Part shown: piece after piece, positions 34,805 through 48,287 of the stretch
How positions within the stretch are numbered: the stretch's first letter is position 1
How the letters are laid out: each line of letters begins with the position of its first letter
Virus record (IMG/VR): IMGVR_UViG_3300042350_004528
Span: 186,001 to 250,000 of that record
Reading direction: 5' to 3' (one strand)
Length of the DNA: 64,000 bases
Program-made: the position numbers and the translations under genes
Notes under the pieces: model-generated
Seen by the model: only the letters and a program-made list of their open reading frames with translations
Database searches by the model: none
Told to the model about the DNA's origin: nothing

Positions 34805-35032
34805 TTATTTCCTTAAATGTTCTGGGTGAATGGGATTCTTGCAATTACCCTTATGTTCAAAGATCGCCCCCCTATCATAATCAGCAAAGAAATATTCACA
34901 ACCCTCAATCTCAACAATGTTTAATTTGGAATGTCCGTTGTTGATCACAATGTTTGTTTGTCTCTTCTCAACCGTTGATTGTGTGCAAGAAACCAATCCG
35001 ATTAAAATCACCGCAATTAATATCTTTCTCAT
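34805..35032 (-). CDS. Putative lipoprotein
   Basis: LVSC lipobox; EGCEY..HKGNCKNPIH. Confidence 0.8.
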   Translation of the reverse strand: MRKILIAVILIGLVSCTQSTVEKRQTNIVINNGHSKLNIVEIEGCEYFFADYDRGAIFEHKGNCKNPIHPEHLRK

Positions 35033-35889
35033 GCTGTTTCCCTTTCCGCATTAAGAGACTTCAATTTCAATCCTGGTGTGGACAACCATTTGATGATTTC
35101 CTCAGCGGTGTACCAACCAAAGTTATCATCATCGTCAGAGTAGTTCACCCAAAACATAATATCATACTCCGTGTTCGCTTTTCTCTTCTTCTCTTCCCTC
35201 GCAACAGCATCCTTATAATCAATCCACCTCGGTGAACAAGCCATAAAATACTTATTACCTTTGTAACCACTGTTACGTCTTGTCTCCTCCTTCAACTTGG
35301 TGACGCCAATCTCTTTCTCATACTCAATGAGATCATATGCTTCCTTATCCACGTTGTACATCTCATCCAATACGTCTTGTGGCAACTTATCCAGAATGAG
35401 AACGGACAATGATGAATTTGAGAACGCTGGCACCTCAGACTTTAGAAATGTGATGGCGATGTTCTTATTCTTGAACGCCTCATACAACTCCCTCATCTTA
35501 GGGAAATCTTCCTTGTTCTTGCTAGCGATACAAAAGTCACCCTCGTCCCAAGCGCACTCAAGGTCGTTGTAAACATTCTTAATGTCATAGCCCAAAAGAT
35601 CCTTGGCCTTATACTTCTCCTTCAACCCATATGGTCTTTCAGATGTCAACACACAAAGGTCTTTATCTTCTTTGAACAGAACCTCACCGATTGTCATTCT
35701 TCGGTTATCAATCCCAAGCAATGGTTTCTTAATCCCCAAGATGTTTGTCTTGTCGGACTTCAATCCAAACTTGTTTTTGATTCCCCTGATTCCCCATTCG
35801 TGTTCCGATGTGAAATCCCAACCGAGTGATACCCCATAAAAGTTATCACCCTCAACGATGAACGATACGTTTTGATATGCTCTTCTCAT
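35029..35889 (-). CDS. Phage hypothetical protein, 286 aa
   Basis: GWDFTSEHEWGI. Confidence 0.87.
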   Translation of the reverse strand: MRRAYQNVSFIVEGDNFYGVSLGWDFTSEHEWGIRGIKNKFGLKSDKTNILGIKKPLLGIDNRRMTIGEVLFKEDKDLCVLTSERPYGLKEKYKAKDLLGYDIKNVYNDLECAWDEGDFCIASKNKEDFPKMRELYEAFKNKNIAITFLKSEVPAFSNSSLSVLILDKLPQDVLDEMYNVDKEAYDLIEYEKEIGVTKLKEETRRNSGYKGNKYFMACSPRWIDYKDAVAREEKKRKANTEYDIMFWVNYSDDDDNFGWYTAEEIIKWLSTPGLKLKSLNAERETA

Positions 35890-36106
35890 GATATATTATT
35901 TTTTTGTGTATTTTTTTAAATCCTTTGCTGAAATATTCAACTCACAATTTCCGTGTGCTTTCAATGAAACGAAAATTTCGCCACGCTCGGTTATCCAGAC
36001 ATTGGTTGCCTTGGTTTTCACACCATCGATGTAAAAATCCTTATCCTTTATGTTTGTTGCGTCTCGCATGTCGCAAATATATAACAGGAATTTTTAATAC
36101 GCAAAT

Positions 36107-36343
36107 TTATTTCGTTAATTTTATAAAGATTCCAGCTGGCCCATGTGATACATGATAACCACAACATCTATTGTCCAAAGTCATACCATACGATTTAAGA
36201 CGAAATATTATCGCGGACTCAGCCTCACCATAAAAAATAGCGTGAACCGTGCTATCAGCGTAATCAATTGAAACGCCAATTATTTTATTTATTGCCCAAG
36301 ATGGGTTTATGTCCAACTCTTCAACTGGTATGTGTACTAACAT
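36107..36343 (-). CDS. Hypothetical protein, 78 aa
   Basis: ORF track. Confidence 0.7.
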   Translation of the reverse strand: MLVHIPVEELDINPSWAINKIIGVSIDYADSTVHAIFYGEAESAIIFRLKSYGMTLDNRCCGYHVSHGPAGIFIKLTK

Positions 36344-37167
36344 TGTATTCTTTTTAATACGTCTAATATTCTTGAGTATGCTTCAACACCAACTGGTATC
36401 GACATTAATGAGACCAAAAAGTTACTGATGTATGAGTACATTGCGATGATATCCCCTTGAGATAACTTGTCAGATGTCTTGATGAAGACAATCAAAGCTG
36501 TCACAAGAAATGTATATTTAACCGCATTCACCCAGAACCAATTCTTTCCTTGTAATGTTGAACCGTATATCCATAACTTTCTTCTTCTGTTAAAGAAACT
36601 TGTTATCTCATCCTTATTGGAACGATTGATAACATCAACTTTTTTCTCATATTGATTGTTCCCAACAACAGTTGCTTGTTTTATCTTCTTGTAAAACTTA
36701 AACACAATAAACATAATTGGGAACACACAACCCAACACAATGAAACCTGTTATCAAACTTCCCCTCATCACAAAAACCAAACTACCCAGAACCGTGACAA
36801 TAACGGAAATGTAATAATGAACGTAACTCTCGAGAACATCCACAATCTGGTGAGCCATATCTGTCCTGGCTACCTTAGATGAGTTATCAACATCGGTCTT
36901 ATGTATAAACTCCATCACGATGTTGTTATATATCTTTGTGTATACCTTTGTGTCATAAACCATTCTCTTGTATATGAACATGGTTGATCCAGCGTAAACC
37001 AGAACCAAACCAATCAACCAATTCCAGTTACCAACCAACAAACCATCAATCGTCTTTCCAAGAAAATAGGGTTGCAATAAAAGCAAACCCTCGGCAATTA
37101 ACATGTAAGTGTATATTAATAATAACTCATACTTATATTGCTTAAATATATTAATCAGATGTTTCAT
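36337..37167 (-). CDS. ABC transporter six-TM domain protein (no ATPase domain)
   Basis: PYFLGKTIDGLL, RMVYDTKVY, six hydrophobic segments. Confidence 0.75.
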   Translation of the reverse strand: MKHLINIFKQYKYELLLIYTYMLIAEGLLLLQPYFLGKTIDGLLVGNWNWLIGLVLVYAGSTMFIYKRMVYDTKVYTKIYNNIVMEFIHKTDVDNSSKVARTDMAHQIVDVLESYVHYYISVIVTVLGSLVFVMRGSLITGFIVLGCVFPIMFIVFKFYKKIKQATVVGNNQYEKKVDVINRSNKDEITSFFNRRRKLWIYGSTLQGKNWFWVNAVKYTFLVTALIVFIKTSDKLSQGDIIAMYSYISNFLVSLMSIPVGVEAYSRILDVLKRIQC

Positions 37168-37717
37168 CGTTTTCAGTTTCCCCTTTCAGTTTTTCATAAT
37201 AATCTTTTAGTTCACATAAGCTATACCAGTCCTTATCGAATGTCGGTTCCATTTCCTTTATGTTCTCAACCAGCTCGGCTTTGTAGCCTCTGTGATATAC
37301 ATAATGTTCTATCGCATCAGCCAAATCCTGAAGATGCTTCGGTGCCCCTATGCTTATTCTCAAATCGTAATCAGACCATTTAGTTTTATAATCCCACATT
37401 CGAATCCCCTTGGTTATTTTTCTCTCAATATTATGTAAGAACCTGTTCCTTACTCTAACGATTGAGTTATCCGATCCAAATAAATGCAAGAACCTTAGGA
37501 ACCACCTTGGGCACCACCAGGGTTTGGCTTCAGCATCCATTGCCATTACCAATGCGTGAATCATTCCACGCTTCTCGTAAGCATCCTCGAAAGGAACATA
37601 GCCTAGGTAGCCATACTTTTCATGGAAATTCTTTGGAAAGAAAACCGCTCGCAGGTCATCCAACCTTATATCCATTGTGTGGATCATCCCTTTATTTTTA
37701 CCCTTGAATATTTTCAT
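37151..37717 (-). CDS. Hypothetical protein, 188 aa
   Basis: ORF track. Confidence 0.82.
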   Translation of the reverse strand: MKIFKGKNKGMIHTMDIRLDDLRAVFFPKNFHEKYGYLGYVPFEDAYEKRGMIHALVMAMDAEAKPWWCPRWFLRFLHLFGSDNSIVRVRNRFLHNIERKITKGIRMWDYKTKWSDYDLRISIGAPKHLQDLADAIEHYVYHRGYKAELVENIKEMEPTFDKDWYSLCELKDYYEKLKGETENDETSD

Positions 37718-38054
37718 TTCGAATGTTGTTAAATTCTTCTCTTATTCTTCTGATTATTTCAGCATCGATATTTCTCATTAGTTCTTCTGTCAATGCTCTG
37801 GTCAATTCTTTCTCAACATCTTCATCACATCTAACACGAGTTATTAATTTATCTTTCTCATAAAACCAAATAACCTTGAATCTTTCATATGAAAAGTTCG
37901 ATTTGATTTTTGGATATCTAAACTCTTCGGTTTTGGGAAATGGTTCTTCAAGTTCATTGTTGAATAAAATAACATAATGGTCACCAACATCAATGATATC
38001 ATCACACAATAGGTAGGTTCCATACTCATCATTTAATAACCATTCTTTAGACAT
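37698..38054 (-). CDS. Hypothetical protein, 118 aa
   Basis: ORF track. Confidence 0.78.
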   Translation of the reverse strand: MSKEWLLNDEYGTYLLCDDIIDVGDHYVILFNNELEEPFPKTEEFRYPKIKSNFSYERFKVIWFYEKDKLITRVRCDEDVEKELTRALTEELMRNIDAEIIRRIREEFNNIRNENIQG

Positions 38055-38057
38055 AAA

Positions 38058-38423
38058 TTACTTCTTAGTGTCATCCTTTATGACAATACTGTAATCCAAT
38101 TTATTTAGTTCATCAGATAATCTTTTCAAGAAAGTTTCTTCACCATCATCACCAGACAATAACCAATCAACACGCTGTGCGTATATCTCAGCAATTCTCA
38201 AAATCTTTACAGCATCCCTGAATTTTTTGATGACCTCATCGGGATATTTGTGGTGGGTTCTCTCATCTGGGTATCTTTCAAAATACTCAACGCCATACCA
38301 TCTAACCTTTTCTCTGAACTCCTCATCGGTTAAAGGTCTGCCACTTCGTTCTATTTCACTTTCAATGCTATCAGCAATGTTGCGAATCTTATATTGGTCG
38401 TAATCAAATGCTCCTCCACTCAT
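38058..38423 (-). CDS. Phage hypothetical protein
   Basis: MSGGAFDY..DWLLSGDDGEE. Confidence 0.85.
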   Translation of the reverse strand: MSGGAFDYDQYKIRNIADSIESEIERSGRPLTDEEFREKVRWYGVEYFERYPDERTHHKYPDEVIKKFRDAVKILRIAEIYAQRVDWLLSGDDGEETFLKRLSDELNKLDYSIVIKDDTKK

Positions 38424-38974
38424 ATTTTATTTGTATAAATTTCTTTTATTGTACCATCTTTATAAAAAATTCTGCAATCAGGTTTTGTCCACCCATAGAG
38501 GTTAGCCATAACTTGCGCATACTGCTCAATGCTATCCAATTTAAGTCTACCAACAACTCTTGTTGAACTATATTTATTTTCAACAATTGGTTCAACCAAC
38601 CAAGTGGCGCCAGGATATTGGCTCTTCAAGTTTTTAATAGCGACATCTTTCTGAATGGTTCCTTTTTTACCATCGGTCAGCCATTGAGAAACCTCGTAAC
38701 CATTCCATTTTGTGTTCATCTCCTCGATGTTGGTGGCATAAGATGCTGGGTACCAACGATCGCCACAGCAAGGGCAATCCATACCCTCATCACAACCATT
38801 CCAATAACAACCCAAGTCCTCGGCAATTCTTAGAGCCTCATCCTCCGAAACGGCCTCAATGTACAATCTGTGGCATAGTTTATCATCGGTGATGAATGAA
38901 CCACCACTGTTGTTCTGTGTAATTTCGTAAAATTCGGTTGATTTTGCCTTAATCGCTGATTTTTCGCTGACCAT
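38420..38974 (-). CDS. Phage hypothetical protein with CPCCGDRW motif
   Basis: QNNSGG..DCPCCGDRW. Confidence 0.85.
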   Translation of the reverse strand: MVSEKSAIKAKSTEFYEITQNNSGGSFITDDKLCHRLYIEAVSEDEALRIAEDLGCYWNGCDEGMDCPCCGDRWYPASYATNIEEMNTKWNGYEVSQWLTDGKKGTIQKDVAIKNLKSQYPGATWLVEPIVENKYSSTRVVGRLKLDSIEQYAQVMANLYGWTKPDCRIFYKDGTIKEIYTNKI

Positions 38975-39039
38975 AATTTTTATTTTAGGTCACAAATATA
39001 AAGAAATATTTTTAAATATCCAAATCTTATTGAAACATT

Positions 39040-39300
39040 TTAATCAAAATTATATTTGACTGTAACCAGATAATTTTTTTTGATATCTTCTGGTATAAAA
39101 CACCAGACAATATTAATCATCTTGTGGCGCGAAAAAAATGTTGATGGTTTCTCATCTATTTGTTTCAACGCATCGGAATTTTCTATAATATGTTTCTCAT
39201 CGTTTGATATCCAAACGTATTGATCACCGATTCTATTTGGTTTTTTATCATCAACCAAAAGAACCATCTTGTCAAGCATTATAAATCTCTCATTCAGCAT
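39040..39300 (-). CDS. Hypothetical protein
   Basis: ORF track. Confidence 0.7.
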   Translation of the reverse strand: MLNERFIMLDKMVLLVDDKKPNRIGDQYVWISNDEKHIIENSDALKQIDEKPSTFFSRHKMINIVWCFIPEDIKKNYLVTVKYNFD

Positions 39301-39329
39301 AATCGTATTGAAAATCTAAGTAAAACAAT

Positions 39330-39578
39330 TCACCCCCTTGGGCTGTCCATTGGTTGGACAGCCACTAAATCTTGTGAAATAAATGTATGCGTAACACCAG
39401 TCGCATAAGGCATAAAGATCATGTCATAGTAAACGGAAACGTGTGTACCGAATGTTTCGTAATACCAAACTACTTTGTGGTTTACACCATCGATTGTGAT
39501 GTACTCATCACCATCTTTTAATTGATCATCCGTAACAATATAATGATTGCCCTGGTACTTTATGAACTCACCAATCAT
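39330..39578 (-). CDS. Hypothetical protein
   Basis: ORF track. Confidence 0.72.
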   Translation of the reverse strand: MIGEFIKYQGNHYIVTDDQLKDGDEYITIDGVNHKVVWYYETFGTHVSVYYDMIFMPYATGVTHTFISQDLVAVQPMDSPRG

Positions 39579-39829
39579 ATTGAAATGTCATCATTCTTTG
39601 GGGATGCGAAAGTATAATTAGCTGCCATAGCAACTTCAAACTTAGTTAAAAGTTCTTTTATATCAGTCGCACCCCAACCCGTACCAACCGTTCTGTTTTT
39701 TGCGGTGTGTTCGATTGTGTATCGCACAACTCTATCGTGTGTTACACTAACGGACACTCGGAAGTCAGACCTATCAGTGTATTTCCTTTCAATCTCAGCA
39801 ACTTTATCCGCTAGTTCAAGTAATGTCAT
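39575..39829 (-). CDS. Hypothetical protein
   Basis: ORF track. Confidence 0.72.
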   Translation of the reverse strand: MTLLELADKVAEIERKYTDRSDFRVSVSVTHDRVVRYTIEHTAKNRTVGTGWGATDIKELLTKFEVAMAANYTFASPKNDDISI

Positions 39830-39830
39830 A

Positions 39831-40070
39831 TCAGTCCCACTCTGTTATGTCCATATCTCTGTCGTTGATCACACAATCTAATGCTCTTTCAATGTCCCAA
39901 AAATATGTAACGAAATTACCATCAATCATTGTAATTGTGTTCACACCAAGTGCAGTGTAAAACTTGTCTGGGTCAATATCGTTATCGACTAACATTGTGA
40001 CGATCTCATCACTAGTGAAACCGACCTCATATTTTCTTTTGCTATTTTTAATTATTTCTTCTGCCGTCAT
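39831..40070 (-). CDS. Hypothetical protein, 79 aa
   Basis: Start corrected to MTAEE. Confidence 0.75.
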   Translation of the reverse strand: MTAEEIIKNSKRKYEVGFTSDEIVTMLVDNDIDPDKFYTALGVNTITMIDGNFVTYFWDIERALDCVINDRDMDITEWD

Positions 40071-40148
40071 ATTATTTCTTATTTTTACGAGCATTCGGTA
40101 GCACCAGGAAAAAATACCATAGTATTACCAGTATCGTTAATGTATGCA

Positions 40149-40754
40149 TTAATTAATTTTTTCTATGTAACTTAAAACCTCTTCTTTAGTATTAACCCAA
40201 TCCAATAGTTCGTAGTGTTCGCCTTTGGCGTTTATAAACTCGGCGTTGATTATTTGCAAACTATCTTCAACATTGTGAATGTTTCCGATGTATCGCTCAC
40301 GTGCTTCATCGTCATATTCAAAAAGACAACCATCGGAATCTTCCTCAACTCTGATCGTGCTTCCCCATTTAACAATGTTCCAGAAAGCGCCACCCTCGGA
40401 TATTGATGTTGCAAAATCATCCACATCGAATGATTCAGCATCTTCTTTGATTGGCATGTCCCAAGTTTCTTTCAACATTGGTAGCAACTCGTTCCACCAT
40501 TTAACATCACCATCAAAATTATCCTCAACGGTAACAACAACCTCGGCAATACCATGCTCTTCTTCATCATCCCAGTATAATTCATCACCCTCGGTGGATA
40601 TCCATTTCTTGGTGAAATCCTCTGAGAATCTGATTGAATCGAGTAGTTCTGTTAAAAATCTAACCCACGCTGACTCATCCGATTCTAACTCCTCAAACAA
40701 ATCGTAATCAGTAATTTTGTAAGTTAATGTGTAGGATACTTTAAACTTTTTCAT
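40149..40754 (-). CDS. Acidic hypothetical protein, 201 aa
   Basis: ORF track. Confidence 0.8.
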   Translation of the reverse strand: MKKFKVSYTLTYKITDYDLFEELESDESAWVRFLTELLDSIRFSEDFTKKWISTEGDELYWDDEEEHGIAEVVVTVEDNFDGDVKWWNELLPMLKETWDMPIKEDAESFDVDDFATSISEGGAFWNIVKWGSTIRVEEDSDGCLFEYDDEARERYIGNIHNVEDSLQIINAEFINAKGEHYELLDWVNTKEEVLSYIEKIN

Positions 40755-40758
40755 TGTA

Positions 40759-42210
40759 TTAAATTTTAATCTTTATGTTTTCGATAATTAAATCACCAGT
40801 GTGAATACCGTTATGTTTATAAATTTCAACATGGTATCTGTTAGATGAGTTGACCTCAAATTCAAATTGCATTGTTGGTCTACCGTCAGCGTTGAGTGTT
40901 CTACAACAACCCTTTTCACAAGACTCACCAGGCATTTTATGATCGGCTCCGAAGAAAGACATATAACCCGCGAAGCTCTCAACCATATTCGGGTGTGCTG
41001 TTGTTAATTTATTTCGATTAACGTAAACCTCATAGACACCTTTAGGTATCTTCGTGAATGAAACGGTTAATACTAATTTAACTCTATTTGGCGCACCTAG
41101 CTGGCCACTTGTTGGCGTAACCTGTGTGACAGCATCTGTGATTTGACCATTAATTGGTATGCTGAAATTATTGCTATGTAAAACATTGTTGTATGCTCTA
41201 GCCATCATCGGTTGATCAGCTTTTTCATATACCTCAACATCATCATAATCATAATCAAGTTTGTATATTATCTTTATCACATCTTCCATTGTATAGGTAA
41301 CTTTCTTACCATTCTCATCGAAGAAAACATAAGACCAGTCAGCTGATTTTAACATCTCCAATGTAACTTTCTCCCCATTCGGAGAATTAGTCCATTGCTG
41401 CCATAGTCTATCAATGTTTGAGTGATGTGTCCAGAAAACTGGATCAAACCCAGCTGTCGGAACCCAACCCATCAACCCTGTCTCACTAATTTTACCAGTG
41501 ATTGGGTTGTTGAACAACTTACCAGTTTGTACATTACCAGCGCCGATGTAATCGTGCATCGCACCATGTGGGGCATTGTTAATCTGCGAGTTAAACATTT
41601 CGTATGAGGTGTAACTCATTAATTTATCTGTCTCCAAAGCTCTTTGGATTTCACCTGCAATAGGATAACCATAGTTCAAGCTATCAAATCTACAACGTTC
41701 ATATAGGGATGATTTCGGATCTCTGAATTTTTCTTGTAAAAATTTGTCGTAGTCAAAATTATTTGTGTAGCCCCAATAAGGTAATGCGAAATCTTTATAT
41801 CCAGACAATTTTCTAACTATCTTTTCTAAATGGTGAATGTATAATCTATGCCAAACCAAGAAATGAATTTTTTCTTTACCACTTGGTGTATGTGTACAAT
41901 TATCCCAAGCTTCTTTTAAATCGGCTGGGGTCTTATAGCTTGGGCACAGTGGGTTATATAAGATTGTGTCGGGAACCCAATGAATTGCACCTTGATAATA
42001 CCAACTCAATGGGTTATCACAAGGCATATTACGCATAATTTTAAAGGCTTTGTCCATGGCTTCAACGTCCATTTGTGCCTCTGGTGTGTGAATTTCTTTT
42101 CGGAGATATCGTTTTCCAACAACATCTCCAACGCTTTCGGTTCTGTCTTTACATGATATTAGCCATAATAGGCCAAACATCAAAATGAATAGTATTAATA
42201 TTTTTTTCAT
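40759..42210 (-). CDS. Tyrosinase / polyphenol oxidase (type-3 copper), lipoprotein
   Basis: CuA AIHW..CTH..FLVWHRLY; LPYW; CuB PHGAMH..DPVFWTHHSNIDRLW; LISC lipobox. Confidence 0.93.
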   Translation of the reverse strand: MKKILILFILMFGLLWLISCKDRTESVGDVVGKRYLRKEIHTPEAQMDVEAMDKAFKIMRNMPCDNPLSWYYQGAIHWVPDTILYNPLCPSYKTPADLKEAWDNCTHTPSGKEKIHFLVWHRLYIHHLEKIVRKLSGYKDFALPYWGYTNNFDYDKFLQEKFRDPKSSLYERCRFDSLNYGYPIAGEIQRALETDKLMSYTSYEMFNSQINNAPHGAMHDYIGAGNVQTGKLFNNPITGKISETGLMGWVPTAGFDPVFWTHHSNIDRLWQQWTNSPNGEKVTLEMLKSADWSYVFFDENGKKVTYTMEDVIKIIYKLDYDYDDVEVYEKADQPMMARAYNNVLHSNNFSIPINGQITDAVTQVTPTSGQLGAPNRVKLVLTVSFTKIPKGVYEVYVNRNKLTTAHPNMVESFAGYMSFFGADHKMPGESCEKGCCRTLNADGRPTMQFEFEVNSSNRYHVEIYKHNGIHTGDLIIENIKIKI

Positions 42211-42220
42211 AATTTTTAAT

Positions 42221-42397
42221 TTATTTTACAACATTAAGTAAAAAAAGTGTGATGTAAACCATAGATACAACTGTCATAAATTTAATTGTCATGGCGATGA
42301 TGGGTTTAGTACCGTTAACTTTAGCAACAAGCATGAAGGATCCTGTTGCATAGAACCAAATGATGGTTATGATCTTAGCAATGTCTAATATGTTCAT
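42221..42397 (-). CDS. Two-TM small membrane protein
   Basis: Hydrophobic, 58 aa. Confidence 0.65.
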   Translation of the reverse strand: MNILDIAKIITIIWFYATGSFMLVAKVNGTKPIIAMTIKFMTVVSMVYITLFLLNVVK

Positions 42398-42401
42398 AGT
42401 T

Positions 42402-42965
42402 TTAATTTTTAAATAAATCACTCAGGTATTGAAACATTTCAAAGTAAGGTTCGGTGGCATACCAAGTAAACCCCAACTTAGTCATGAATTCCTCATTTTC
42501 TTTTTTATACATCTCAAACATACGACTACCAGTCATCTTAGAGTATTGTACATTAGCGATACGATCACATAATTTAACAAATACAGCGCCTTTGGTATTA
42601 CGAATACCCTCATAGTATTTGTCATTGGCACGTTCCTTACGGTTCTTACCCTTTTCATTGGTTACAGCATAAATAATCTCAGCCGCTTCCTGACCCAAAA
42701 TATCTTTAACATCGTTATATGACACACGACAATCTTCGATCAAATCGTGGCCCCAACAAGCAAGCATACATGCGTGTTTAGTCGAAACCTGTGTGGTTGG
42801 ATTAACAACCACATCACCAGTAAAGTATTCTTTATCGTCTAAAAGATGGTTGTACTTCTCACCGACATGGGCCACCATTCTCAAGTGGAACTCATACGGT
42901 AAGTATGTGTCGTACATGTGGTTTGTTTCATTGTGCTTCTCAATGCACCATTTTTTCTTATCCAT
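42402..42965 (-). CDS. HD-domain (p)ppGpp hydrolase-like protein (SpoT/Mesh1 type)
   Basis: PYEFHL, HDLIED, VKLCDRIAN. Confidence 0.82.
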   Translation of the reverse strand: MDKKKWCIEKHNETNHMYDTYLPYEFHLRMVAHVGEKYNHLLDDKEYFTGDVVVNPTTQVSTKHACMLACWGHDLIEDCRVSYNDVKDILGQEAAEIIYAVTNEKGKNRKERANDKYYEGIRNTKGAVFVKLCDRIANVQYSKMTGSRMFEMYKKENEEFMTKLGFTWYATEPYFEMFQYLSDLFKN

Positions 42966-43064
42966 AATTTCTCTTGTTGTTACAAAGGTAAGAAAGAAAA
43001 ATTTAATAACCAAAAAAAGGGGATAATTATTTCTAATTACCCCCCAGCACTTGACATGGCATGC

Positions 43065-43421
43065 TTAAGATTTTTTGTAATAGATCGTATCAGGTAAAGA
43101 CCCAAACACGAACTTGGTTACGTCACATAACCACATTTTAATATCAAATGGTATACCCATGTAAGACTCAACCTTATATGTGGCACCAGAACCATTCCCC
43201 TCATCATACAACCAACCATCCGAAATTTTTTTGAGCTCCTCAGCACCCTCAAATGGTTTATCGGACAATGCTATCCAAATATACCACTCACCTTCACATA
43301 GCAAATCAAGCCAGGTGTCAGCACCAAGAACCATTTGTAGATCGGCTTTAGATCCTTCCCATTCTGGAAGATCAACAAACCAACCATTAAATTCTTTATC
43401 AAATCTTAATCTTTGTTTCAT
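43065..43421 (-). CDS. DUF6717-like protein
   Basis: WFVDLP..MVLGAD..WLCDVTKFVFG. Confidence 0.7.
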   Translation of the reverse strand: MKQRLRFDKEFNGWFVDLPEWEGSKADLQMVLGADTWLDLLCEGEWYIWIALSDKPFEGAEELKKISDGWLYDEGNGSGATYKVESYMGIPFDIKMWLCDVTKFVFGSLPDTIYYKKS

Positions 43422-43804
43422 AAACTACATTTAAACATATAGTTAAATATCTCACAATTTGAATTTAGTTTAGATAAATCTGGAAAGGTCACATCACCTA
43501 TATAGTTATTATCTATATGTGATATGTGTAACTCGGTGAACATGTGTGCATATTTTTCATATGTTTTTTTGCCACCAATGCACCAATCAATAACTTCGAT
43601 ATCTGGATTCCAAAGTCCCCTGGTATCGATTACAACTTCACGACCCTTCAATGGTGGTAACTCTAGTGATGTGTTGTAGCCAACGAGTAATCTACCACCC
43701 ATGGTTTTTTCTTTGAAATGTTTGAAATCTTCGGAACTACGCCATAGCATTTTATTACCGATTCCTATGAACCCGAGATTATTTACAGCAATTATAGCTT
43801 TCAT
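43418..43804 (-). CDS. folA: Dihydrofolate reductase (short)
   Basis: AVNNLGFIG..LW..EDFKHFKEKT, PLKGR, IGG, GDVTFP. Confidence 0.88.
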   Translation of the reverse strand: MKAIIAVNNLGFIGIGNKMLWRSSEDFKHFKEKTMGGRLLVGYNTSLELPPLKGREVVIDTRGLWNPDIEVIDWCIGGKKTYEKYAHMFTELHISHIDNNYIGDVTFPDLSKLNSNCEIFNYMFKCSL

Positions 43805-44115
43805 TTTGATAATAAATCAATTAGTATGTAAGACAATTTATAACCAGCGAATGCACCTAAAGCTGATGGTATTGGAAACACAATTAACTTACCAAGTGAT
43901 GTAACATACTTCGGTCGGTTAACAATTCTACCCATATAAAAGTAGTAGGTTATATAACCAAGAAGAACCGCTAGATCTGTTTTGGTTGCGATAAACACAA
44001 CCAACATAGCACCGATAAAACCAAACGTAAAATTGTCTCTGGACTCGGTAAAAACCTCACCAGGAGTTGCATCTTTATATTCTTTAACTATTTGTTTTAT
44101 CGTTGTCTTGCCCAT
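43801..44115 (-). CDS. Membrane protein, 104 aa
   Basis: Three hydrophobic segments. Confidence 0.78.
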   Translation of the reverse strand: MGKTTIKQIVKEYKDATPGEVFTESRDNFTFGFIGAMLVVFIATKTDLAVLLGYITYYFYMGRIVNRPKYVTSLGKLIVFPIPSALGAFAGYKLSYILIDLLSK

Positions 44116-44371
44116 TTTGTTTTATTTTCTCAAGATATTCAATCATAGTTTCGGCGTCTTTTGGGTTAATGATTATTTCATCAAATGCGCCGTAATTTGA
44201 CTGTCTACCGAATATATAATCAATAGCATATAAAATCCTATCACGCAATGATTTACGTTTCAAGTGTGGCTCGATGTATAGCGTATTATCTTCATCATCA
44301 TACCAAATGGCAAATTGATGTTCGAGCGATTCACATTCACACACCAAGATTTCTCTATTAATCTTTTCCAT
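44084..44371 (-). CDS. Hypothetical protein
   Basis: CECESLEH. Confidence 0.8.
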   Translation of the reverse strand: MEKINREILVCECESLEHQFAIWYDDEDNTLYIEPHLKRKSLRDRILYAIDYIFGRQSNYGAFDEIIINPKDAETMIEYLEKIKQNGQDNDKTNS

Positions 44372-44588
44372 CTTCTTTTTTAATATCCTCTCGAGTTAAT
44401 TCTTTTTCAGCTTGGTGCATGAAGATAATCTCTTTTGTTTGTTCATCAACTGTGCAAGCGGCAATTGGTTTATCAACTCGGTAATGATATTCTTCTCCTA
44501 GCATACCAACTTCTCCGTTGACAACTTCAAAGGCATCAAACTCCTCTGGTAGGGTGTTGAGCCACGTTTTTAATTCTCCTAAATTCAT
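44358..44588 (-). CDS. Hypothetical protein
   Basis: ORF track. Confidence 0.75.
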   Translation of the reverse strand: MNLGELKTWLNTLPEEFDAFEVVNGEVGMLGEEYHYRVDKPIAACTVDEQTKEIIFMHQAEKELTREDIKKEDGKD

Positions 44589-45592
44589 ATATCGTAAGGT
44601 GTTGTACTGAATGTTATCTTCTCGATACTCAAACAGTTTGTGTTTATTATTTTTTCGATAAACATAATAAAATCAGAAACAATATCAAATGATTTTATTT
44701 GTTTGTTCAGGTATAGGTTGTAAACCCCAATTTCTTGAAGAACATCTGATTTATTGATTATTAAATCAGTCACACCGTTGATGTTAATTGCTTTGATCAT
44801 ATCGTCCAAGTCCAACCAATCAACTTGCCTCGGTCTACCAGTTGTTGCACCAAACTCATTACCAACTTCTCTTATCTTCACAAACAATGGGTCTGCACCT
44901 TCAAAGTTTTTGGCACCAACATATGTGCGATAAGCTTTTGCAACGCCGTACACTCTGTCAATTTTTTGTGCTGGTATTCCATTAAGGATGGCCCCACCAA
45001 TTGTGCAATGTGATGATGTAACATATGGGTAATCACCCCAATCAATATCCAACTCAAAACCCTGAGCCCCTTCGCAAAGTATACTACAACCGTCTTGCCC
45101 ATTAAATAATCCGTATGTATCAACAACCATGTCGGCTAACATAGGAACATCAACAGCTCTAAGACCTTTTCGATAATACTTATCTCGGTAAGCTGGGCCA
45201 TTCCCAGTTTTAGTCGTACCGATTTTACTATCCAAACTATCTTCGTGTAGATGTTGCTCGGTGATGATGTGAACACGTTTATCAATCAATAAGTTCTCAC
45301 GAACTTTAAATCCAGCTAATTCGAGTTCATCAATTTCTTGAATAAGTTTGTCTGGGTTGACCACACAACCAAGTCCAATAATTGATTTGATTCCATACAA
45401 TACACCAACTGGTATGAAATGTGTTACATATTTTTCACCATTGTGATATATCGTGTGACCAGCATTACCACCACCATTGTAGCGCATAACATAATCATAC
45501 TCATCTGGCTTCTTAGCCAGAGCGTGGGCAACCTTGCCCTTTCCAGTGTCACCCGCTTGCAGGTCAACAATTACATCAGCTTTGCGTATCAT
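44585..45592 (-). CDS. purA: Adenylosuccinate synthetase (short form, 335 aa)
   Basis: GDTGKGK, GGGNAGHT, GTTKTGNGPAY, EGAQG, YPYVTSS, EFGATTGRPR, NKSD. Confidence 0.92.
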   Translation of the reverse strand: MIRKADVIVDLQAGDTGKGKVAHALAKKPDEYDYVMRYNGGGNAGHTIYHNGEKYVTHFIPVGVLYGIKSIIGLGCVVNPDKLIQEIDELELAGFKVRENLLIDKRVHIITEQHLHEDSLDSKIGTTKTGNGPAYRDKYYRKGLRAVDVPMLADMVVDTYGLFNGQDGCSILCEGAQGFELDIDWGDYPYVTSSHCTIGGAILNGIPAQKIDRVYGVAKAYRTYVGAKNFEGADPLFVKIREVGNEFGATTGRPRQVDWLDLDDMIKAININGVTDLIINKSDVLQEIGVYNLYLNKQIKSFDIVSDFIMFIEKIINTNCLSIEKITFSTTPYDI

Positions 45593-46047
45593 AGTGCGTG
45601 GTTTTCCCAATAACCGTTAGGGTAATCAATATTAACATAAAGCATATAAGTTGTGTAACCTTTGCGCTCATCTTTTTTATAGTGATTCCAGGTAGCATCT
45701 TCATCCATAAATGGTCGCAAACCAATAGCTTTGAATTTCTCAACAAACCACTTACAAAGTTCATGGTGAATGACCATATCTTTTGTCTCGAGTTCAAAAC
45801 GAACACAAACCCATGGTGTTGTCATATAACCATCGGATCCCCCACCATAACTCAAAAGTTCTGGATATAAAACGATACCGATTTTTGGTTTCCATTCGTC
45901 ATTTTTAGAGTCTGGGTTAATCAAAAAAGGTGTTTTAACTTCCAAGTAATGTTCATCAACCTGTTTAAAATTTGGGTCGTGTAATTGTAATCGATCAATA
46001 ATTTGGTCGATTTCTTTGTCGATTTGTTCTCTTATATTTACTAACAT
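45589..46047 (-). CDS. Hypothetical protein
   Basis: Start corrected to MLVNI. Confidence 0.75.
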   Translation of the reverse strand: MLVNIREQIDKEIDQIIDRLQLHDPNFKQVDEHYLEVKTPFLINPDSKNDEWKPKIGIVLYPELLSYGGGSDGYMTTPWVCVRFELETKDMVIHHELCKWFVEKFKAIGLRPFMDEDATWNHYKKDERKGYTTYMLYVNIDYPNGYWENHAL

Positions 46048-46099
46048 AATTTTATTTAAAATAGGATTGGGTTGTTTCCAACCCAATCCATTGTTTTAA

Positions 46100-47962
46100 T
46101 TATTTTACCTCGGTTACAGTACCCTGTTCAGATTCTTTTTTCTCTTGGATTTGCTTTAACAATTCCATTCCAAGTAAGCCATTGATTGGGCTACTATCAC
46201 CACTACCTGTGATAAGAATCTCAGGGATGATTTTGATACCATTTGTACCAATCATTTCGGTAACTTTAAGTTTACCAAAGTTTTCAACACCCATAGCTTT
46301 AACTTGCTTTTCGTAAGCCTCAGCAGTTGATTTACCAATCGCGGAAATCTTAGATGCTTCAGCATCACCAGTCAATTTAATCTGCGTAGCATCAGCTTCA
46401 GCGTTCAATTTCTTAGCTTCAGCTTGAGCGGCAGCTTTTAATTTCAAGGCTTGTGCTTCACCCTCAGATTTCTTAACAGCGGCCTCAGCTTCACGTTGAG
46501 AAATCTCAACCGATTGTTGTGCTGACACCATTTGTCCTTGCATATCGGCAAGTGCTTTAGCCGATTCAAGCGTCTTACGTTTATCTTGAGCTTTGCGTTG
46601 AGTGTCAAATGTTACCTCTTCTTCTTGTGCAATCTTACGGTCAGTAAGAGTTTTCATCAGAGAGTCTGGTGGTGTGATGTCACCAATAAGCGTATCAACC
46701 GCATGCACGTTGTATTCTTCAAGAACCGTGCTGATCTTATCTTTAGCAGCATTCTGTCTTTGTTGACGAGTTGATAAGAACGCAATCACATCAGAATCTT
46801 GTGCCGAGTTACGGAAATAGTTACCGATGGTTGGTTCAAGAACTTGTGACACAAGGTTCTGCATTGAGCCGAAACGAGCAATTACTTTAGGCGCTTCGGT
46901 TGATGGGATGTGGATAATCTGTGAAACATCCAAATTGAATGGGAAACCGTCTTGTGAACGTACTGTGATGGTACTCAAGTTCTTATCAAGATTGTGTGAT
47001 TCATTACGAGCATTTGCCCAGTTAAGAACCAAGTTTGTTGTTGGTACTATCTCAATCTTCTGTGTATAAGGATTGATTGCGTATTTACCTGGATCCAATG
47101 GGGTTGCCCACACACCTTTCTGACCTTTTTTAACGATGTTACCGTGTTTAAAATCACTTCCAGTGGTGTCTTCACCATCTTCACCAACATAAGAGATAAC
47201 AACACCAACATGACCGATAGGAATGGATGTCATTTCTTTCTTCTCAACTTCGATTGCCCATGGGTTCAATGAATAAGAACCAGCTTGAATAACTTGGATT
47301 TGTAAACCCCTTTGTCCACCATTAGCCAAAAACTTATCAAAGTCTTGGAAATTATTGTGACCGCTAACCACAGAACCAGCGATTGAACCAATCTCAAGTG
47401 GTGTACCATCAAGTGCTGTAACAACGCCAACCATACCATCTTCAATGTATGTGATGTCAGCGAGGAATATCTCGAATAAATGGGTATTAACACGATACAC
47501 ACCGTTGTTTAAATAACCAACTTGTTTACCACGTTGTCCACCTGTTGATAAAAACGCTCTAGCATCTTGGTAATCATCACAATCAACGTGTCGAGCCAAG
47601 ATAGCACCCTTTGGTAACTGTGCGCCATCTTTAGCTGATAACAAGCCGATCTTACCTTTAGGTATTGTTGTTAAAGGGGCTTGTTCGATTTCGAATTGCC
47701 ATATCCAGTAAGCCCAATATAAACCTGGGGCTAATGTGTCGGCCTGAAAGCCTGGTTCATTGTTTAAGGCGATAATCTTACCATCGGGTAATTGTTTATT
47801 GGGGCCAAAAAGTACAAATTTTTTGGTCACCAAACCAATTTTGTCTTCAGGTATGATAACCATACCAAAGAACACTCGTAGTACGAACTTGTAGAATACT
47901 ACCATGAGGATCGGGATTAAAACCCATGCGTAACCCAATACGCTAGTTAATTGTTCTGTCAT
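46100..47962 (-). CDS. SPFH/band-7 flotillin-like membrane protein, 620 aa
   Basis: N-terminal TM, repeated GQRG..PG.Y units, VRSQDGF SPFH core, Ala/Glu coiled coil. Confidence 0.9.
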   Translation of the reverse strand: MTEQLTSVLGYAWVLIPILMVVFYKFVLRVFFGMVIIPEDKIGLVTKKFVLFGPNKQLPDGKIIALNNEPGFQADTLAPGLYWAYWIWQFEIEQAPLTTIPKGKIGLLSAKDGAQLPKGAILARHVDCDDYQDARAFLSTGGQRGKQVGYLNNGVYRVNTHLFEIFLADITYIEDGMVGVVTALDGTPLEIGSIAGSVVSGHNNFQDFDKFLANGGQRGLQIQVIQAGSYSLNPWAIEVEKKEMTSIPIGHVGVVISYVGEDGEDTTGSDFKHGNIVKKGQKGVWATPLDPGKYAINPYTQKIEIVPTTNLVLNWANARNESHNLDKNLSTITVRSQDGFPFNLDVSQIIHIPSTEAPKVIARFGSMQNLVSQVLEPTIGNYFRNSAQDSDVIAFLSTRQQRQNAAKDKISTVLEEYNVHAVDTLIGDITPPDSLMKTLTDRKIAQEEEVTFDTQRKAQDKRKTLESAKALADMQGQMVSAQQSVEISQREAEAAVKKSEGEAQALKLKAAAQAEAKKLNAEADATQIKLTGDAEASKISAIGKSTAEAYEKQVKAMGVENFGKLKVTEMIGTNGIKIIPEILITGSGDSSPINGLLGMELLKQIQEKKESEQGTVTEVK

Positions 47963-48031
47963 TTTTTTATTTTTTTAAATGTTGTACAAAGGTAAGTTAA
48001 AATTTTTAAATCACCAAATTTTTTTATAAAA

Positions 48032-48286: not shown

Positions 48287-48287
48287 C

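What the first reader, a model, noticed from the sequence alone, without database searches (positions are those of the whole stretch)
40759..42210. Phage-encoded lipoprotein tyrosinase with plant-PPO-like C-terminal motifs
Seen: complete CuA and CuB His sets, a lipobox, then DWSYVFFDENG..LDYDY and YEVYVN segments resembling the DWL and KFDV domains of polyphenol oxidases. Type-3 copper oxidases are unusual phage cargo. Inference: melanin or quinone production at the infected-cell envelope for UV/oxidative shielding, cross-linking, or phenolic detoxification.
Basis: partly seen in the sequence, partly recalled or inferred. Interest (0 to 1): 0.62.

Follow-up and report, generated by a model that had tools for sequence, protein, structure and literature searches.

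The report
Jumbo-phage membrane-anchored latent tyrosinase
A 299-kb lake-water phage encodes an intact, exported, lipid-anchored copper tyrosinase with a built-in lid domain. It belongs to a large clade found so far only on phage-like contigs, which would make tyrosinases a previously undescribed kind of phage cargo whose role in infection is still unknown.

Summary
ORF 40759-42210 (-) encodes 483 aa with a textbook lipobox (L-I-S-C20). Pfam finds a Tyrosinase domain (E 1.5e-26) and a PPO1_DWL linker just above its cut-off. The C-terminal domain is an all-beta lid. The AlphaFold model (pLDDT 87) superposes over both domains on latent two-domain tyrosinases: Hahella HcTyr1 Z 29.3, tomato and apple PPO Z about 27.

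All Cu ligands are invariant: H77, H107, H121 and H215, H219, H263. So is C105, in the thioether position.

The genome is a real jumbo myophage with sheath, baseplate, DNA polymerase and RNR genes. It occurs in lake metagenomes from 20 studies.

The new result is the clade. The 120 closest homologue clusters form one group (100/99 support) that excludes the Flavobacterium and Mucilaginibacter genes. Every context examined is phage-like. The clade marker is a C-x3-C-C loop after an invariant Phe-Phe, where cellular kin have His/Met-rich loops. Fungal pro-tyrosinases have the same layout: a plug residue, then a copper-loading Cys loop.

dN/dS is 0.044. No homologue was found in 50,697 deposited phage genomes, PHROGs or BFVD.

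The biochemical identity and the export signal are well supported. The physiological role (envelope melanisation or quinone tanning, phenol detoxification, exclusion of other phages) is untested inference.

The parts
40759..42210 (-). Complete CDS of the phage tyrosinase (483 aa plus stop codon at 40759-40761)
   Evidence: ORF list and translation. Pfam Tyrosinase E 1.5e-26. dN/dS 0.044 against a 92%-identical relative.
42151..42210 (-). Sec-type signal peptide ending in lipobox L-I-S-C20 (residues 1-20). Cys20 is the predicted lipidation site.
   Evidence: Sequence. Modelled as a helix at 2-19. 48 of 121 clade members have a lipobox, 67 have a hydrophobic anchor without Cys and 6 are truncated. 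The bacterial kin are also lipoproteins.
42112..42150 (-). Flexible tether between the lipid anchor and the enzyme (residues 21-33)
   Evidence: pLDDT is below 50 for residues 20-30.
41356..42111 (-). Catalytic four-helix-bundle tyrosinase domain (residues 34-285)
   Evidence: Pfam PF00264. VIA-align Z 22-23 to the catalytic cores of walnut, grape, sweet potato and Verrucomicrobium tyrosinases. dN/dS 0.023.
41848..41982 (-). CuA site: H77 (HisA1), C105-x-H107 (thioether-type Cys plus HisA2 on a loop) and W-H121-R (HisA3). There is a 5-residue insertion between HisA2 and HisA3.
   Evidence: Invariant columns. The assignment of HisA2 comes from alignment with distant relatives that keep the canonical 9-residue spacing.
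41422..41568 (-). CuB site: H215, H219 and H263, plus the 7th His H262. Activity controllers are G216 and D220, the gate residue is V250, and the water-keeper column holds N211 (just upstream, residue 211).
   Evidence: The His residues are conserved 126/126. G216, D220 and V250 are near-invariant in the clade. Column 211 is N or D in the clade and E in 71 of 126 wider relatives. The roles of these positions are taken from PMC11608171.
41191..41355 (-). DWL-type linker (residues 286-340) with the D-W-x-Y-V-F-F-D-E-N-G and L-D-Y-D-Y motifs
   Evidence: Pfam PPO1_DWL 22.7 bits against a cut-off of 20.8. Found in 57 of 75 relatives.
40762..41190 (-). C-terminal beta-sandwich lid domain (residues 341-483)
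   Evidence: Eight strands at 343-482. Both domains superpose together on latent two-domain tyrosinases: 8b74 Z 29.3, 6hqi 26.8, 6els 26.7, 7xio 26.4. DUF7868 is found in 34 of 75 relatives and PPO1_KFDV in 3 of 75. dN/dS 0.040.
40903..40974 (-). Invariant F-x-G-[FY]-M-x-F-F-G strand and turn (candidate active-site plug F419/F420), followed by a flexible D-H-K-M-x-G-x-S-C431-x3-C435-C436 loop (candidate copper-loading loop). This is the clade marker.
   Evidence: The C-x3-C-C motif is present in 120 of 121 clade proteins. It is absent from the bacterial kin and all other 50%-identity representatives inspected, which have His/Met-rich loops there. pLDDT is below 50 at 426-435. abPPO4 has the same layout: plug Phe454, then a disordered loop with CXXC (PMC4157443).
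42221..42397 (-). Upstream small two-TM membrane protein (58 aa). It is a neighbour conserved only in the closest relatives.
   Evidence: Translation. A homologue sits in the same position in L052 (69%-identical tyrosinase) but not in more distant phages.
40149..40754 (-). Downstream acidic 201-aa protein with no known family. It is a neighbour conserved only in the closest relatives.
   Evidence: No Pfam, PHROG or NCBIfam match. Homologues lie downstream in L052 and L053 only.
43018..43045 (-). Terminator-like hairpin with a T-run upstream of the HD gene. It may mark the start of the transcription unit HD hydrolase, small membrane protein, tyrosinase.
   Evidence: Consensus scan: 12-bp stem followed by TTTTTTGG. 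This is a pattern match only.

Best explanation
The gene encodes a functional type-3 (binuclear) copper phenol oxidase of the lid-bearing bacterial/plant PPO architecture. A lake jumbo myophage makes it in the infected cell.

Proposed mechanism:
1. The pre-protein is exported unfolded through Sec.
2. It is lipidated at Cys20 and tethered to a membrane by a roughly 13-residue linker, facing the periplasm or cell surface.
3. The C-terminal beta-sandwich lid sits over the active site, with an invariant Phe-Phe turn (F419/F420) as the probable plug.
4. The adjacent flexible His/Met/Cys loop (C431-x3-C435-C436) captures copper and hands it to the six His ligands. C105 can then form the thioether to HisA2.
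5. When the lid is displaced or cleaved, the enzyme uses O2 to oxidise o-diphenols (and possibly monophenols) to o-quinones at the envelope. These quinones polymerise to melanin-like material or cross-link nearby nucleophiles.

Status of each step:
- Shown here: family, fold, ligand set, export signal, phage location, purifying selection and a clade found only on phage-like contigs.
- Inferred by analogy: latency, the plug residue and copper loading by the Cys loop.
- Inferred only: the benefit to the phage. In my order of preference, this is protective tanning or melanisation of the virocell envelope against light/ROS, oxidation of inhibitory lake phenolics, or blocking of superinfecting phages.
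For: Family and fold:
- Pfam Tyrosinase E 1.5e-26 plus PPO1_DWL above its cut-off.
- AlphaFold pLDDT 87, pTM 0.88.
- Z 29.3 to Hahella HcTyr1 and Z 26-27 to latent tomato and apple PPO and Ralstonia TYR, spanning residues 34-483. Catalytic-only structures give Z about 23.
- HcTyr1 is an active tyrosinase whose lid lowers activity about 10-fold (PMC11609597).

Active site:
- All six His ligands, the 7th His and C105 are invariant.
- Characterised bacterial tyrosinases with a C-terminal domain all carry the thioether (PMC11608171).
- The plug-then-Cys-loop layout matches abPPO4, where Phe454 is followed by a CXXC 'copper grappler' (PMC4157443).

Export:
- Lipobox.
- Every full-length clade member has an N-terminal export or anchor segment.

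Phage origin:
- Sheath, baseplate, DNA polymerase, DnaB and RNR.
- 100%-identical contigs in other IMG/VR samples.
- 20 lake and freshwater runs hold the sequence.

Clade found only on phage-like contigs:
- Monophyletic at 100/99 and in 100% of bootstrap trees, excluding Flavobacterium and Mucilaginibacter.
- Contexts L004-L011, L036, L037, L039, L049-L052, L135 and L136 are phage-like.
- The sister lineage sits beside Terminase_6N and Portal_T4.
- The nearest ESM Atlas cluster is 61% Viruses.

Selection:
- dN/dS 0.044 overall, 0.023 for the catalytic domain and 0.040 for the lid.
Against: - No activity, localisation or expression data exist. No RNA run holds the sequence and read laying gave no usable coverage of the gene.
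- The water-keeper column holds Asn211, not the Glu that is almost universal in characterised PPOs. Catalysis may therefore be weak or altered.
The contact of F419/F420 and the Cys loop with the copper site is inferred from layout, not measured.
- In an oxidising periplasm the three Cys may simply form a disulfide.
- No conserved partner gene or pathway points to a substrate.
- This phage lacks UvdE and photolyase, so the UV-related neighbourhood seen in some relatives is not general.
- The host is not identified. The phage is distant from all cultured phages.
Confidence: 0.7

Rival explanations
1. It is a chemical superinfection-exclusion or armour factor. Many phage lipoproteins act at the envelope. 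This enzyme would oxidise exposed Tyr residues or phenolic groups on envelope proteins and polysaccharides. That would cross-link or mask receptors so that other phages, or grazers' enzymes, cannot act on the infected cell.
For: The protein is membrane-anchored and exported in all clade members. Tyrosinases oxidise protein-bound and small phenols (general knowledge; substrate breadth of HcTyr1 in PMC11609597). The gene sits among early/auxiliary genes, not structural ones. No small-molecule pathway genes lie nearby.
Against: This is pure inference. No known exclusion protein is a copper oxidase. The lid would have to open on a macromolecular substrate. No receptor or adsorption data exist.
Confidence: 0.15
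2. It detoxifies or transforms environmental phenolics (humic and algal polyphenols in lake water) that would otherwise inhibit host enzymes or inactivate progeny virions.
For: The habitat is lake and fresh water. Related lid-bearing bacterial tyrosinases oxidise diverse phenolics and are discussed in the phenolic 'latch' context (PMC11609597). The protein has an outward-facing location signal.
Against: No evidence shows that phenolics limit infection. Quinone products are themselves reactive. There is no associated transporter or quinone reductase.
Confidence: 0.15
3. It is a permanently capped type-3 copper protein that does not act as an oxidase. It would work like a haemocyanin functional unit, binding O2 or buffering copper.
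For: The best PDB sequence matches are mollusc haemocyanin units (E 1.4e-42, summed over units). A lid with a hydrophobic plug is present. The water-keeper Glu is replaced by Asn.
Against: The best structural matches are enzymes. The gate residue Val250 and the controllers G216 and D220 are typical of active tyrosinases. A single-unit, membrane-tethered O2 carrier has no obvious use to a phage.
Confidence: 0.05
4. It is a neutral passenger gene recently picked up from a Bacteroidota host, or the contig is cellular or chimeric.
For: The sister groups are Flavobacterium and Mucilaginibacter lipoprotein tyrosinases at 45-51% identity. IMG/VR labels one carrier, the 476-kb record, as a provirus.
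Against: The clade is deep and diversified, with its own marker loop, and all contexts examined are phage-like. dN/dS is 0.044. The same locus is assembled identically in other samples. Phage hallmark genes lie on the same 299-kb contig. Only 6 of 401 sampled Bacteroidota genomes have any homologue.
Confidence: 0.03

Closest known systems
HcTyr1, lid-bearing tyrosinase of Hahella sp. CCB MM4 (PDB 8B74; PMC11609597)
   Same: Best structural match: Z 29.3, 365 residues aligned, both domains. Shared features are the catalytic core plus C-terminal lid, an aromatic plug (Phe397 in HcTyr1), and a latent form that is less active than the cleaved form.
   Different: Only about 22% identical. HcTyr1 is a soluble bacterial enzyme. 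The phage protein is lipid-anchored, has a 5-residue insertion between HisA2 and HisA3, has Asn in the water-keeper column, and has a C-x3-C-C loop after the plug.
Plant latent polyphenol oxidases (tomato SlPPO1 6HQI, apple MdPPO1 6ELS, aurone synthase 4Z11)
   Same: Three-part architecture of Tyrosinase, DWL linker and beta-sandwich lid. Z 24.6-26.8 over residues about 20-483. Pfam DWL match. A thioether-type Cys is present. An E-x-F-A-G-like motif is present in the lid.
   Different: The plant gate residue Phe is Val250 here. The Cys is two residues before HisA2 (fungal/mollusc position), not after HisA1. The KFDV model is not matched by this protein. Targeting differs: a Sec lipoprotein signal rather than plastid/thylakoid transit peptides.
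Fungal pro-tyrosinases abPPO4 and Aspergillus oryzae MelB (PMC4157443)
   Same: A plug Phe on the loop after a lid strand, followed by a disordered loop carrying a Cys motif implicated in copper insertion. The C-x-H thioether motif is at HisA2.
   Different: Weaker overall structural match (Z 17-21). The motif is C-x3-C-C rather than CXXC. The proteins are larger, eukaryotic and not membrane-anchored by lipid.
Uncharacterised lipoprotein tyrosinases of Flavobacterium and Mucilaginibacter (loci L012-L018)
   Same: Nearest cellular relatives at 45-51% identity with the same domain order, a lipobox, all ligands, G216 and V250. They are sister groups in the tree.
   Different: They have His/Met-rich loops instead of the Cys loop. 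Their contexts are ordinary chromosomal ones. They are rare: 6 of 401 sampled Bacteroidota genomes.
Known virus-encoded cuproproteins (cyanophage plastocyanin, chlorovirus Cu-Zn SOD; PMC9402790)
   Same: Copper proteins carried by aquatic viruses as auxiliary genes.
   Different: Different folds and chemistry. That survey found few or no viral sequences for other cuproprotein families, tyrosinase included.

Membership tests
Type-3 copper tyrosinase / polyphenol oxidase (Pfam PF00264) | Profile match above the curated threshold | tested here: met
   94.5 bits against a cut-off of 22.6, E 1.5e-26. 75 of 75 relatives match.
Type-3 copper tyrosinase / polyphenol oxidase (Pfam PF00264) | Six His ligands (3 CuA, 3 CuB), with HisA2 on a loop and the others on helices | tested here: met
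   H77, H107, H121 and H215, H219, H263 are invariant. H107 lies in the loop before helix 112-136.
Type-3 copper tyrosinase / polyphenol oxidase (Pfam PF00264) | Four-helix-bundle catalytic fold | tested here: met
   Z 22-23 at rmsd 2.4-3.3 Å to the catalytic cores of plant and bacterial tyrosinases.
Type-3 copper tyrosinase / polyphenol oxidase (Pfam PF00264) | Glutamate 'water keeper' near CuB (almost universal in characterised PPOs) | tested here: not met
   The column (HisB1-4) holds N211. The clade has N (46) or D (19). Wider relatives have E 71, D 27, N 22 of 126. The rule is from PMC11608171. The column was assigned from sequence, not from coordinates.
Type-3 copper tyrosinase / polyphenol oxidase (Pfam PF00264) | Monophenolase and/or diphenolase activity with O2 | not testable with these tools
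   Needs an enzyme assay.
Latent (lid-bearing) PPO of plant/bacterial type | DWL linker domain (PF12142) | tested here: met
   22.7 bits against a cut-off of 20.8. 57 of 75 relatives match.
Latent (lid-bearing) PPO of plant/bacterial type | C-terminal KFDV-type domain by profile (PF12143) | tested here: inconclusive
   This protein has no hit at E <= 1. Three of 75 relatives hit KFDV (best E 3.1e-5) and 34 of 75 hit DUF7868.
Latent (lid-bearing) PPO of plant/bacterial type | Beta-sandwich lid packed over the catalytic domain as in latent structures | tested here: met
   Both domains align at once to 8b74, 6hqi, 6els, 7xio and 4z11 (360-372 residues, Z 24.6-29.3). Catalytic-only entries align about 250 residues at Z about 23.
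Latent (lid-bearing) PPO of plant/bacterial type | Placeholder residue inserted into the active site | tested here: inconclusive
   The candidates are the invariant F419/F420, at the turn after strand 413-418.
Latent (lid-bearing) PPO of plant/bacterial type | Cys positioned for a thioether to HisA2 | tested here: met
   C105-x-H107 is invariant in 124 and 123 of 126 sequences. Formation of the bond itself cannot be tested here.
Plant PPO specifically | Phe gate keeper above CuA | tested here: not met
   The HisB3-13 position holds V250 (V in 64 of 65 clade members). The rule is from PMC11608171.
Streptomyces MelC2/MelC1 type tyrosinase | MelC2 equivalog score and a separate caddie gene | tested here: not met
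   NCBIfam MelC2 gives 36 bits against a cut-off of 450. No conserved neighbouring gene exists across the clade.
Bacterial lipoprotein | Signal peptide with lipobox and Cys+1 | tested here: met
   MKK, a hydrophobic stretch, then L-I-S-C20. LPAM_1 is hit in 3 relatives. Actual lipidation and surface exposure cannot be tested here.
Phage auxiliary (host-derived) gene | Located on a bona fide phage genome, conserved and under selection in phages | tested here: met
   Hallmark genes on the same contig. A clade found only on phage-like contigs. dN/dS 0.044.
Phage auxiliary (host-derived) gene | Expressed during infection | not tested
   No RNA run holds the sequence.

The most novel reading that the evidence does not exclude
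Large lake phages of Bacteroidota-like hosts have carried their own tyrosinase lineage for a long time. They use it to chemically remodel the infected cell's envelope. Quinone tanning or melanisation would act as armour against light, oxidants, grazers or competing phages. This would be a new class of phage envelope-modifying function, with a phage-specific cysteine loop that makes the enzyme self-sufficient for copper loading.
Probability: 0.2. Interest if true: 0.85.

Novelty: new variant of a known kind. Interest (0 to 1): 0.62.

Why it matters
Tyrosinases are among the best-studied copper enzymes, yet none has been described from a phage. I found none in 50,697 deposited phage genomes, PHROGs, BFVD or the searched literature.

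This work shows a deep clade of membrane-anchored, lid-bearing tyrosinases found only on phage-like contigs. They occur in abundant uncultured lake jumbo phages and are under strong purifying selection. That adds oxidative phenol chemistry at the cell envelope to the list of things phages may do to their hosts. It bears on lake carbon and phenolic turnover and on virocell physiology.

It also offers compact, self-contained bacterial-type tyrosinases for enzymology. They carry a natural swap from a His/Met loop to a Cys loop in the lid, and a natural Glu-to-Asn change at the water-keeper position. Both are directly testable questions about copper loading and catalysis.

Tried and rejected
- Z-genome idea. 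A short PurA-like gene (44585-45610) lies near an HD hydrolase. PHROG names it as a PurZ-like family. NCBIfam scores PurA at 273 bits against PurZ at 123 bits (cut-off 300), and the HD protein looks SpoT-like. The idea is not supported.
- UV-repair linkage. UvdE, a UvrC-like gene and Fpg lie near the tyrosinase in L036, L049 and L051. G000 has no UvdE or photolyase. This is only a weak lead.
- Conserved partner or caddie gene. The flanking small membrane protein and the acidic 201-aa protein are conserved only in the closest kin. The bacterial contexts are unrelated to each other.
- Direct KFDV profile hit for this protein: none. The C-terminal part alone has no sequence match in the PDB.
- Read laying (3,001 bases, within the operators' 6,000-letter limit). 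There was almost no coverage over the gene in the four runs chosen, and the tool warns that filters leave holes. No conclusion was drawn.
- RNA evidence: none among the 24 listed runs.
- Presence or absence in sheath-defined relatives. The four large IMG/VR fragments tested lack the gene but are only 16-43% complete, so the result is uninformative. Five tyrosinase-carrying records did not match this phage's sheath, so the carriers are diverse.
- H116 as a copper ligand: rejected, because it is not conserved outside the subfamily.
- Technical failures: a MAFFT run timed out, and two calls had parameter errors.
- No alternative genetic code was used or needed. No contig looked human.
Full report
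**1. The observation**

The window holds an uninterrupted minus-strand ORF at 40759-42210 encoding 483 residues.

- Pfam gives Tyrosinase (PF00264) at 94.5 bits, E 1.5e-26.
- Pfam gives PPO1_DWL (PF12142) at 22.7 bits, just above its 20.8-bit cut-off.
- NCBIfam gives only weak, sub-threshold matches to MelC2 and BagH/FevF.
- PHROGs gives nothing.
- The N-terminus is MKK, then a 14-residue hydrophobic stretch, then L-I-S-C20. This is a canonical lipobox.

**2. Is it on a phage?**

The window is bases 186001-250000 of a 298,833-bp IMG/VR record that CheckV rates complete.

- Outside the window I found a tail sheath, baseplate wedge, family-B DNA polymerase, DnaB helicase, SNF2-type helicase, RNR large subunit, SbcC and a peptidase/endolysin-like protein.
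- Inside the window, the neighbours are typical auxiliary genes. They include DHFR, DUF6717, an HD hydrolase, a short PurA-like synthetase, an SPFH/Band-7 protein, NAMPT, PRPP synthetase, RNA ligase and a tRNA-Met.
- Two other IMG/VR contigs from different samples are 100% identical over 9.7 and 16.9 kb around the gene.
- Twenty lake or freshwater runs from 20 studies hold the stretch, and eight of them may be the source.

The phage is far from every deposited phage: sheath identity is at most 35% and polymerase at most 29%. Its sheath has at least 600 relatives at about 44% identity in IMG/VR. It therefore belongs to a large uncultured group. The contig is a jumbo myophage, not a cell.

**3. 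Anatomy of the protein**

The AlphaFold model, built from a 75-sequence alignment, has mean pLDDT 87 and pTM 0.88. It shows these segments:

| Residues | Feature |
|---|---|
| 2-19 | Signal helix |
| 20-30 | Disordered tether |
| 34-330 | Helical core |
| 343-482 | Eight-strand beta domain |

VIA-align results:

| Target | Z | Notes |
|---|---|---|
| Hahella HcTyr1 (8b74) | 29.3 | 365 residues aligned, model range 34-483 |
| Tomato PPO (6hqi) | 26.8 | Latent two-domain form |
| Latent apple tyrosinase (6els) | 26.7 | Latent two-domain form |
| Ralstonia TYR (7xio) | 26.4 | Two-domain form |
| Latent aurone synthase (4z11) | 24.6 | Latent two-domain form |
| Catalytic-only entries | about 23 | About 250 residues aligned |

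Both domains superpose at once on latent forms. The predicted arrangement is therefore the closed, lid-on state.

Copper ligands:
- Across 126 representatives of the wider family, H77, C105, H107, W120-H121-R122, E129, H215, H219, H262 and H263 are conserved in 122-126 sequences.
- Distant relatives keep the canonical nine-residue HisA2-HisA3 spacing counted from the C-x-H histidine. HisA2 is therefore H107. This subfamily has a five-residue insertion, and H116 is not a ligand.

Reading the active-site modifiers by the rules in PMC11608171:
- The gate residue is Val250, as in bacterial tyrosinases. Plants have Phe.
- The first activity controller is Gly216.
- The second activity controller is Asp220.
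- The water-keeper column holds Asn211. The clade has N or D there, and wider relatives mostly have E. This is the one clear departure from characterised enzymes.

The review also states that every characterised bacterial tyrosinase with a C-terminal domain has the thioether Cys, as this protein does.

**4. The lid and its loop**

- In the lid, F413, G415, M417, F419 and F420 are invariant in the clade.
- They form strand 413-418 and the turn after it.
- Next comes a low-confidence loop with the pattern D-H-K-M-x-G-x-S-C-x-x-G-C-C.
- In mushroom abPPO4 the plug Phe454 sits on the loop right after a lid strand. A disordered loop follows, carrying the CXXC motif held responsible for copper insertion (PMC4157443).
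- The layout here is the same, so I propose F419/F420 as the plug and the Cys loop as the copper-loading element.
- The C-x3-C-C motif is present in 120 of 121 clade proteins.
- It is absent from the bacterial kin and from the other 50%-identity representatives inspected. Most of these that keep the F-F-G motif have His/Met-rich loops at that spot.
- I could not read the model coordinates, so the contacts are inferred.

Family-level Pfam scans give DWL in 57 of 75 relatives, DUF7868 in 34 of 75 and KFDV in 3 of 75. This particular sequence does not match that profile.

**5. Relatives and origin**

Homologue counts:
- The 5.8-billion-protein search found 988 homologues. The top 120 are 50-92% identical over the full length.
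- The exhaustive search of 50%-identity representatives found 3,738 hits at E <= 0.001. It collapsed the close group into a few representatives.

Cellular relatives:
- The closest named relatives are Mucilaginibacter and Flavobacterium lipoproteins at 45-51% identity.
- Only 6 of 401 evenly sampled Bacteroidota genomes have any match at E <= 1e-10.

Trees:
- A 136-row tree places all 120 metagenomic hits and every known viral copy in one clade (SH-aLRT 99), excluding all named bacteria.
- A careful 61-row tree recovers the Cys-loop group as monophyletic at 100/99, and in 100% of 200 bootstrap trees.
- In that tree the sister is representative P0123 (90/92). Flavobacterium plus Mucilaginibacter come next (92/93).

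Genomic contexts spread across the clade:
- L039 (347 kb) is syntenic with G000 at 50-72% protein identity.
- L050 and L011 share several genes with G000.
- L052 keeps the order DHFR, DUF6717, tyrosinase.
- L036, L037, L051, L135 and L136 are dense arrays of small unannotated ORFs. They also carry thymidylate synthase, DNA ligase, HNH, GIY-YIG, ClpP, HU, SLT and similar genes.
- L049 is phage-like but less certain.
- The sister lineage (P0324, L054) lies next to Terminase_6N and Portal_T4.
- No clade member is on a contig longer than 476 kb.
- The nearest ESM Atlas cluster is 61% Viruses (Uroviricota) and the second is Bacteroidota.

In L039 the gene sits between homologues of G000 genes at 158.4 and 160.4 kb. 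G000 has a Laminin_G_3 protein at that position instead. The gene has therefore moved within related genomes.

The simplest reading is one ancient capture from a Bacteroidota-like cell followed by long diversification in phages. The direction of transfer depends on the outgroup rooting.

**6. Is it functional in the phage?**

dN/dS values:

| Comparison or region | dN/dS |
|---|---|
| Against the 92%-identical relative (dS 0.82) | 0.044 |
| Catalytic domain | 0.023 |
| DWL linker | 0.113 |
| Lid | 0.040 |
| Against the 69%-identical relative | 0.117 |

All ligands are invariant in 65 clade sequences. The passenger-gene explanation is not tenable.

**7. Export**

- Every full-length clade member starts with a hydrophobic export or anchor segment.
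- By a simple pattern count, 48 have a lipobox, 67 have a signal-anchor-like segment without the Cys, and 6 are truncated. A few of the lipobox calls may be false.
- The bacterial kin are lipoproteins or carry cleavable signals.
- There is no twin-arginine motif. The apo-protein must therefore be exported unfolded and metallated outside the cytoplasm. This fits a built-in copper-capturing loop.
- Many clade lipoproteins have acidic residues just after the Cys. This is reminiscent of Bacteroidota surface-export signals (my recollection of the literature, not tested). For this protein the residues are K-D-R-T-E, which is ambiguous.

**8. What it does for the phage**

Nothing in the neighbourhood defines a substrate.
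- The two flanking genes are conserved only in the closest relatives.
- A terminator-like hairpin at 43018-43045 suggests a transcription unit of HD hydrolase, small membrane protein and tyrosinase. This is a pattern match only.
- UV-damage and oxidative-damage repair genes (UvdE twice, a UvrC-like gene, Fpg) lie within a few kb of the tyrosinase in three other phages. This phage has neither UvdE nor photolyase.

I commit to the following account. The protein is an exported, tethered, initially latent o-diphenol oxidase or tyrosinase. It generates quinones at the envelope of the infected cell. The most likely benefit is protective tanning or melanisation. Oxidation of lake phenolics and exclusion of other phages are live alternatives. 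Confidence is high for the biochemistry and the export signal, moderate for latency and copper loading, and low for the ecological role.

**9. Comparison with what is known, and novelty**

The enzyme is a member of the tyrosinase family and of its lid-bearing subgroup. Structurally it is closest to HcTyr1 and plant latent PPOs. Its active site is bacterial-type, and its plug and Cys-loop layout is fungal-like.

New elements:
- (a) Phage carriage. There is no tblastn hit in 50,697 deposited phage genomes, no PHROG and no tyrosinase fold in BFVD. Four literature searches turned up no paper describing it. A marine survey of cuproproteins listed only plastocyanin and Cu-Zn SOD as notably viral.
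- (b) A deep clade found only on phage-like contigs, with its own marker loop.
- (c) Membrane anchoring throughout.
- (d) Loss of the water-keeper Glu.

I rate it a new variant of a known kind.

Read laying was given 3,001 letters. Only table 11 was used. Nothing here concerns toxins or animal or plant viruses.

Noticed in passing
window 44585-45610 (-) and 42402-43013 (-): A short (341 aa) adenylosuccinate-synthetase-like gene lies near an HD-domain hydrolase. The best PHROG is a PurZ-like family. NCBIfam scores PurA (273 bits) well above PurZ (123 bits, cut-off 300), and the HD protein resembles the SpoT/RelA hydrolase domain. A Z-genome cluster is therefore not supported. A possible (p)ppGpp hydrolase is worth a look.
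   Followed up: partly
window 48288-50808 (-): NAMPT and PRPP synthetase lie side by side, forming a phage NAD+ salvage pair. NAMPT is 75% identical at the DNA level to Tenacibaculum phages PTm1 and PTm5. This is the only megablast hit to a deposited phage for window 30000-50000, the only stretch of the window searched this way.
   Followed up: no
window 46100-47962 (-): A 620-aa protein with an SPFH/Band-7 domain (PHROG 'lipoprotein' family 200). It is another envelope-associated protein in the same gene block.
   Followed up: no
G000:C1:139607-155557 (-), outside the window (locus L030): A giant ORF of 5,316 aa has a 4,779-aa ORF open on the opposite strand over most of its length. This suggests highly biased or repetitive sequence.
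   Followed up: no
G000:C1:158640-160325 (+) (L031:41-1723) versus L039:10001-11431: In the syntenic 347-kb relative, the tyrosinase occupies the slot next to thymidylate synthase. This phage has a 561-aa Laminin_G_3 (concanavalin-like) protein there instead. The slot looks like a cargo-exchange site.
   Followed up: partly
L036:12357-13331, L049:3850-4761, L051:7809-9080, L036:17095-17901: UV and oxidative DNA-damage repair genes (UvdE twice, a UvrC-like gene, Fpg) lie within 1-7 kb of the tyrosinase in three other phages. G000 itself has no UvdE or photolyase.
   Followed up: partly
L012:3880-5802: In Mucilaginibacter the cellular homologue is preceded by an MbnB/TglH/ChrH (DUF692) enzyme and a DUF2063 protein. 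Such pairs are associated with copper-binding RiPPs. This hints at a copper-handling neighbourhood in the bacterial kin.
   Followed up: no
L054 (66-kb contig), gene at 10001-11350: The sister lineage of the Cys-loop clade keeps the His/Met-rich loop. It sits on a T4-like phage contig with Terminase_6N, Portal_T4 and SegE. At least two kinds of phage therefore carry tyrosinases.
   Followed up: partly
L036:5665-5853; L135:17815-18252; L136:17735-18034: The tyrosinase-carrying large phages also encode ribosomal protein S21, an RNase P protein component, HU and ClpP. These are cell-like genes typical of huge phages.
   Followed up: no
window about 18000-32000: Coding strand and GC skew flip to the plus strand for about 14 kb inside an otherwise minus-strand window. 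This looks like a divergent module boundary.
   Followed up: no
L055-L134 (IMG/VR): At least 600 viral contigs encode a sheath about 44% identical to this phage's. This is a very large uncultured jumbo-phage group with no cultured relative (best deposited match 35%).
   Followed up: partly
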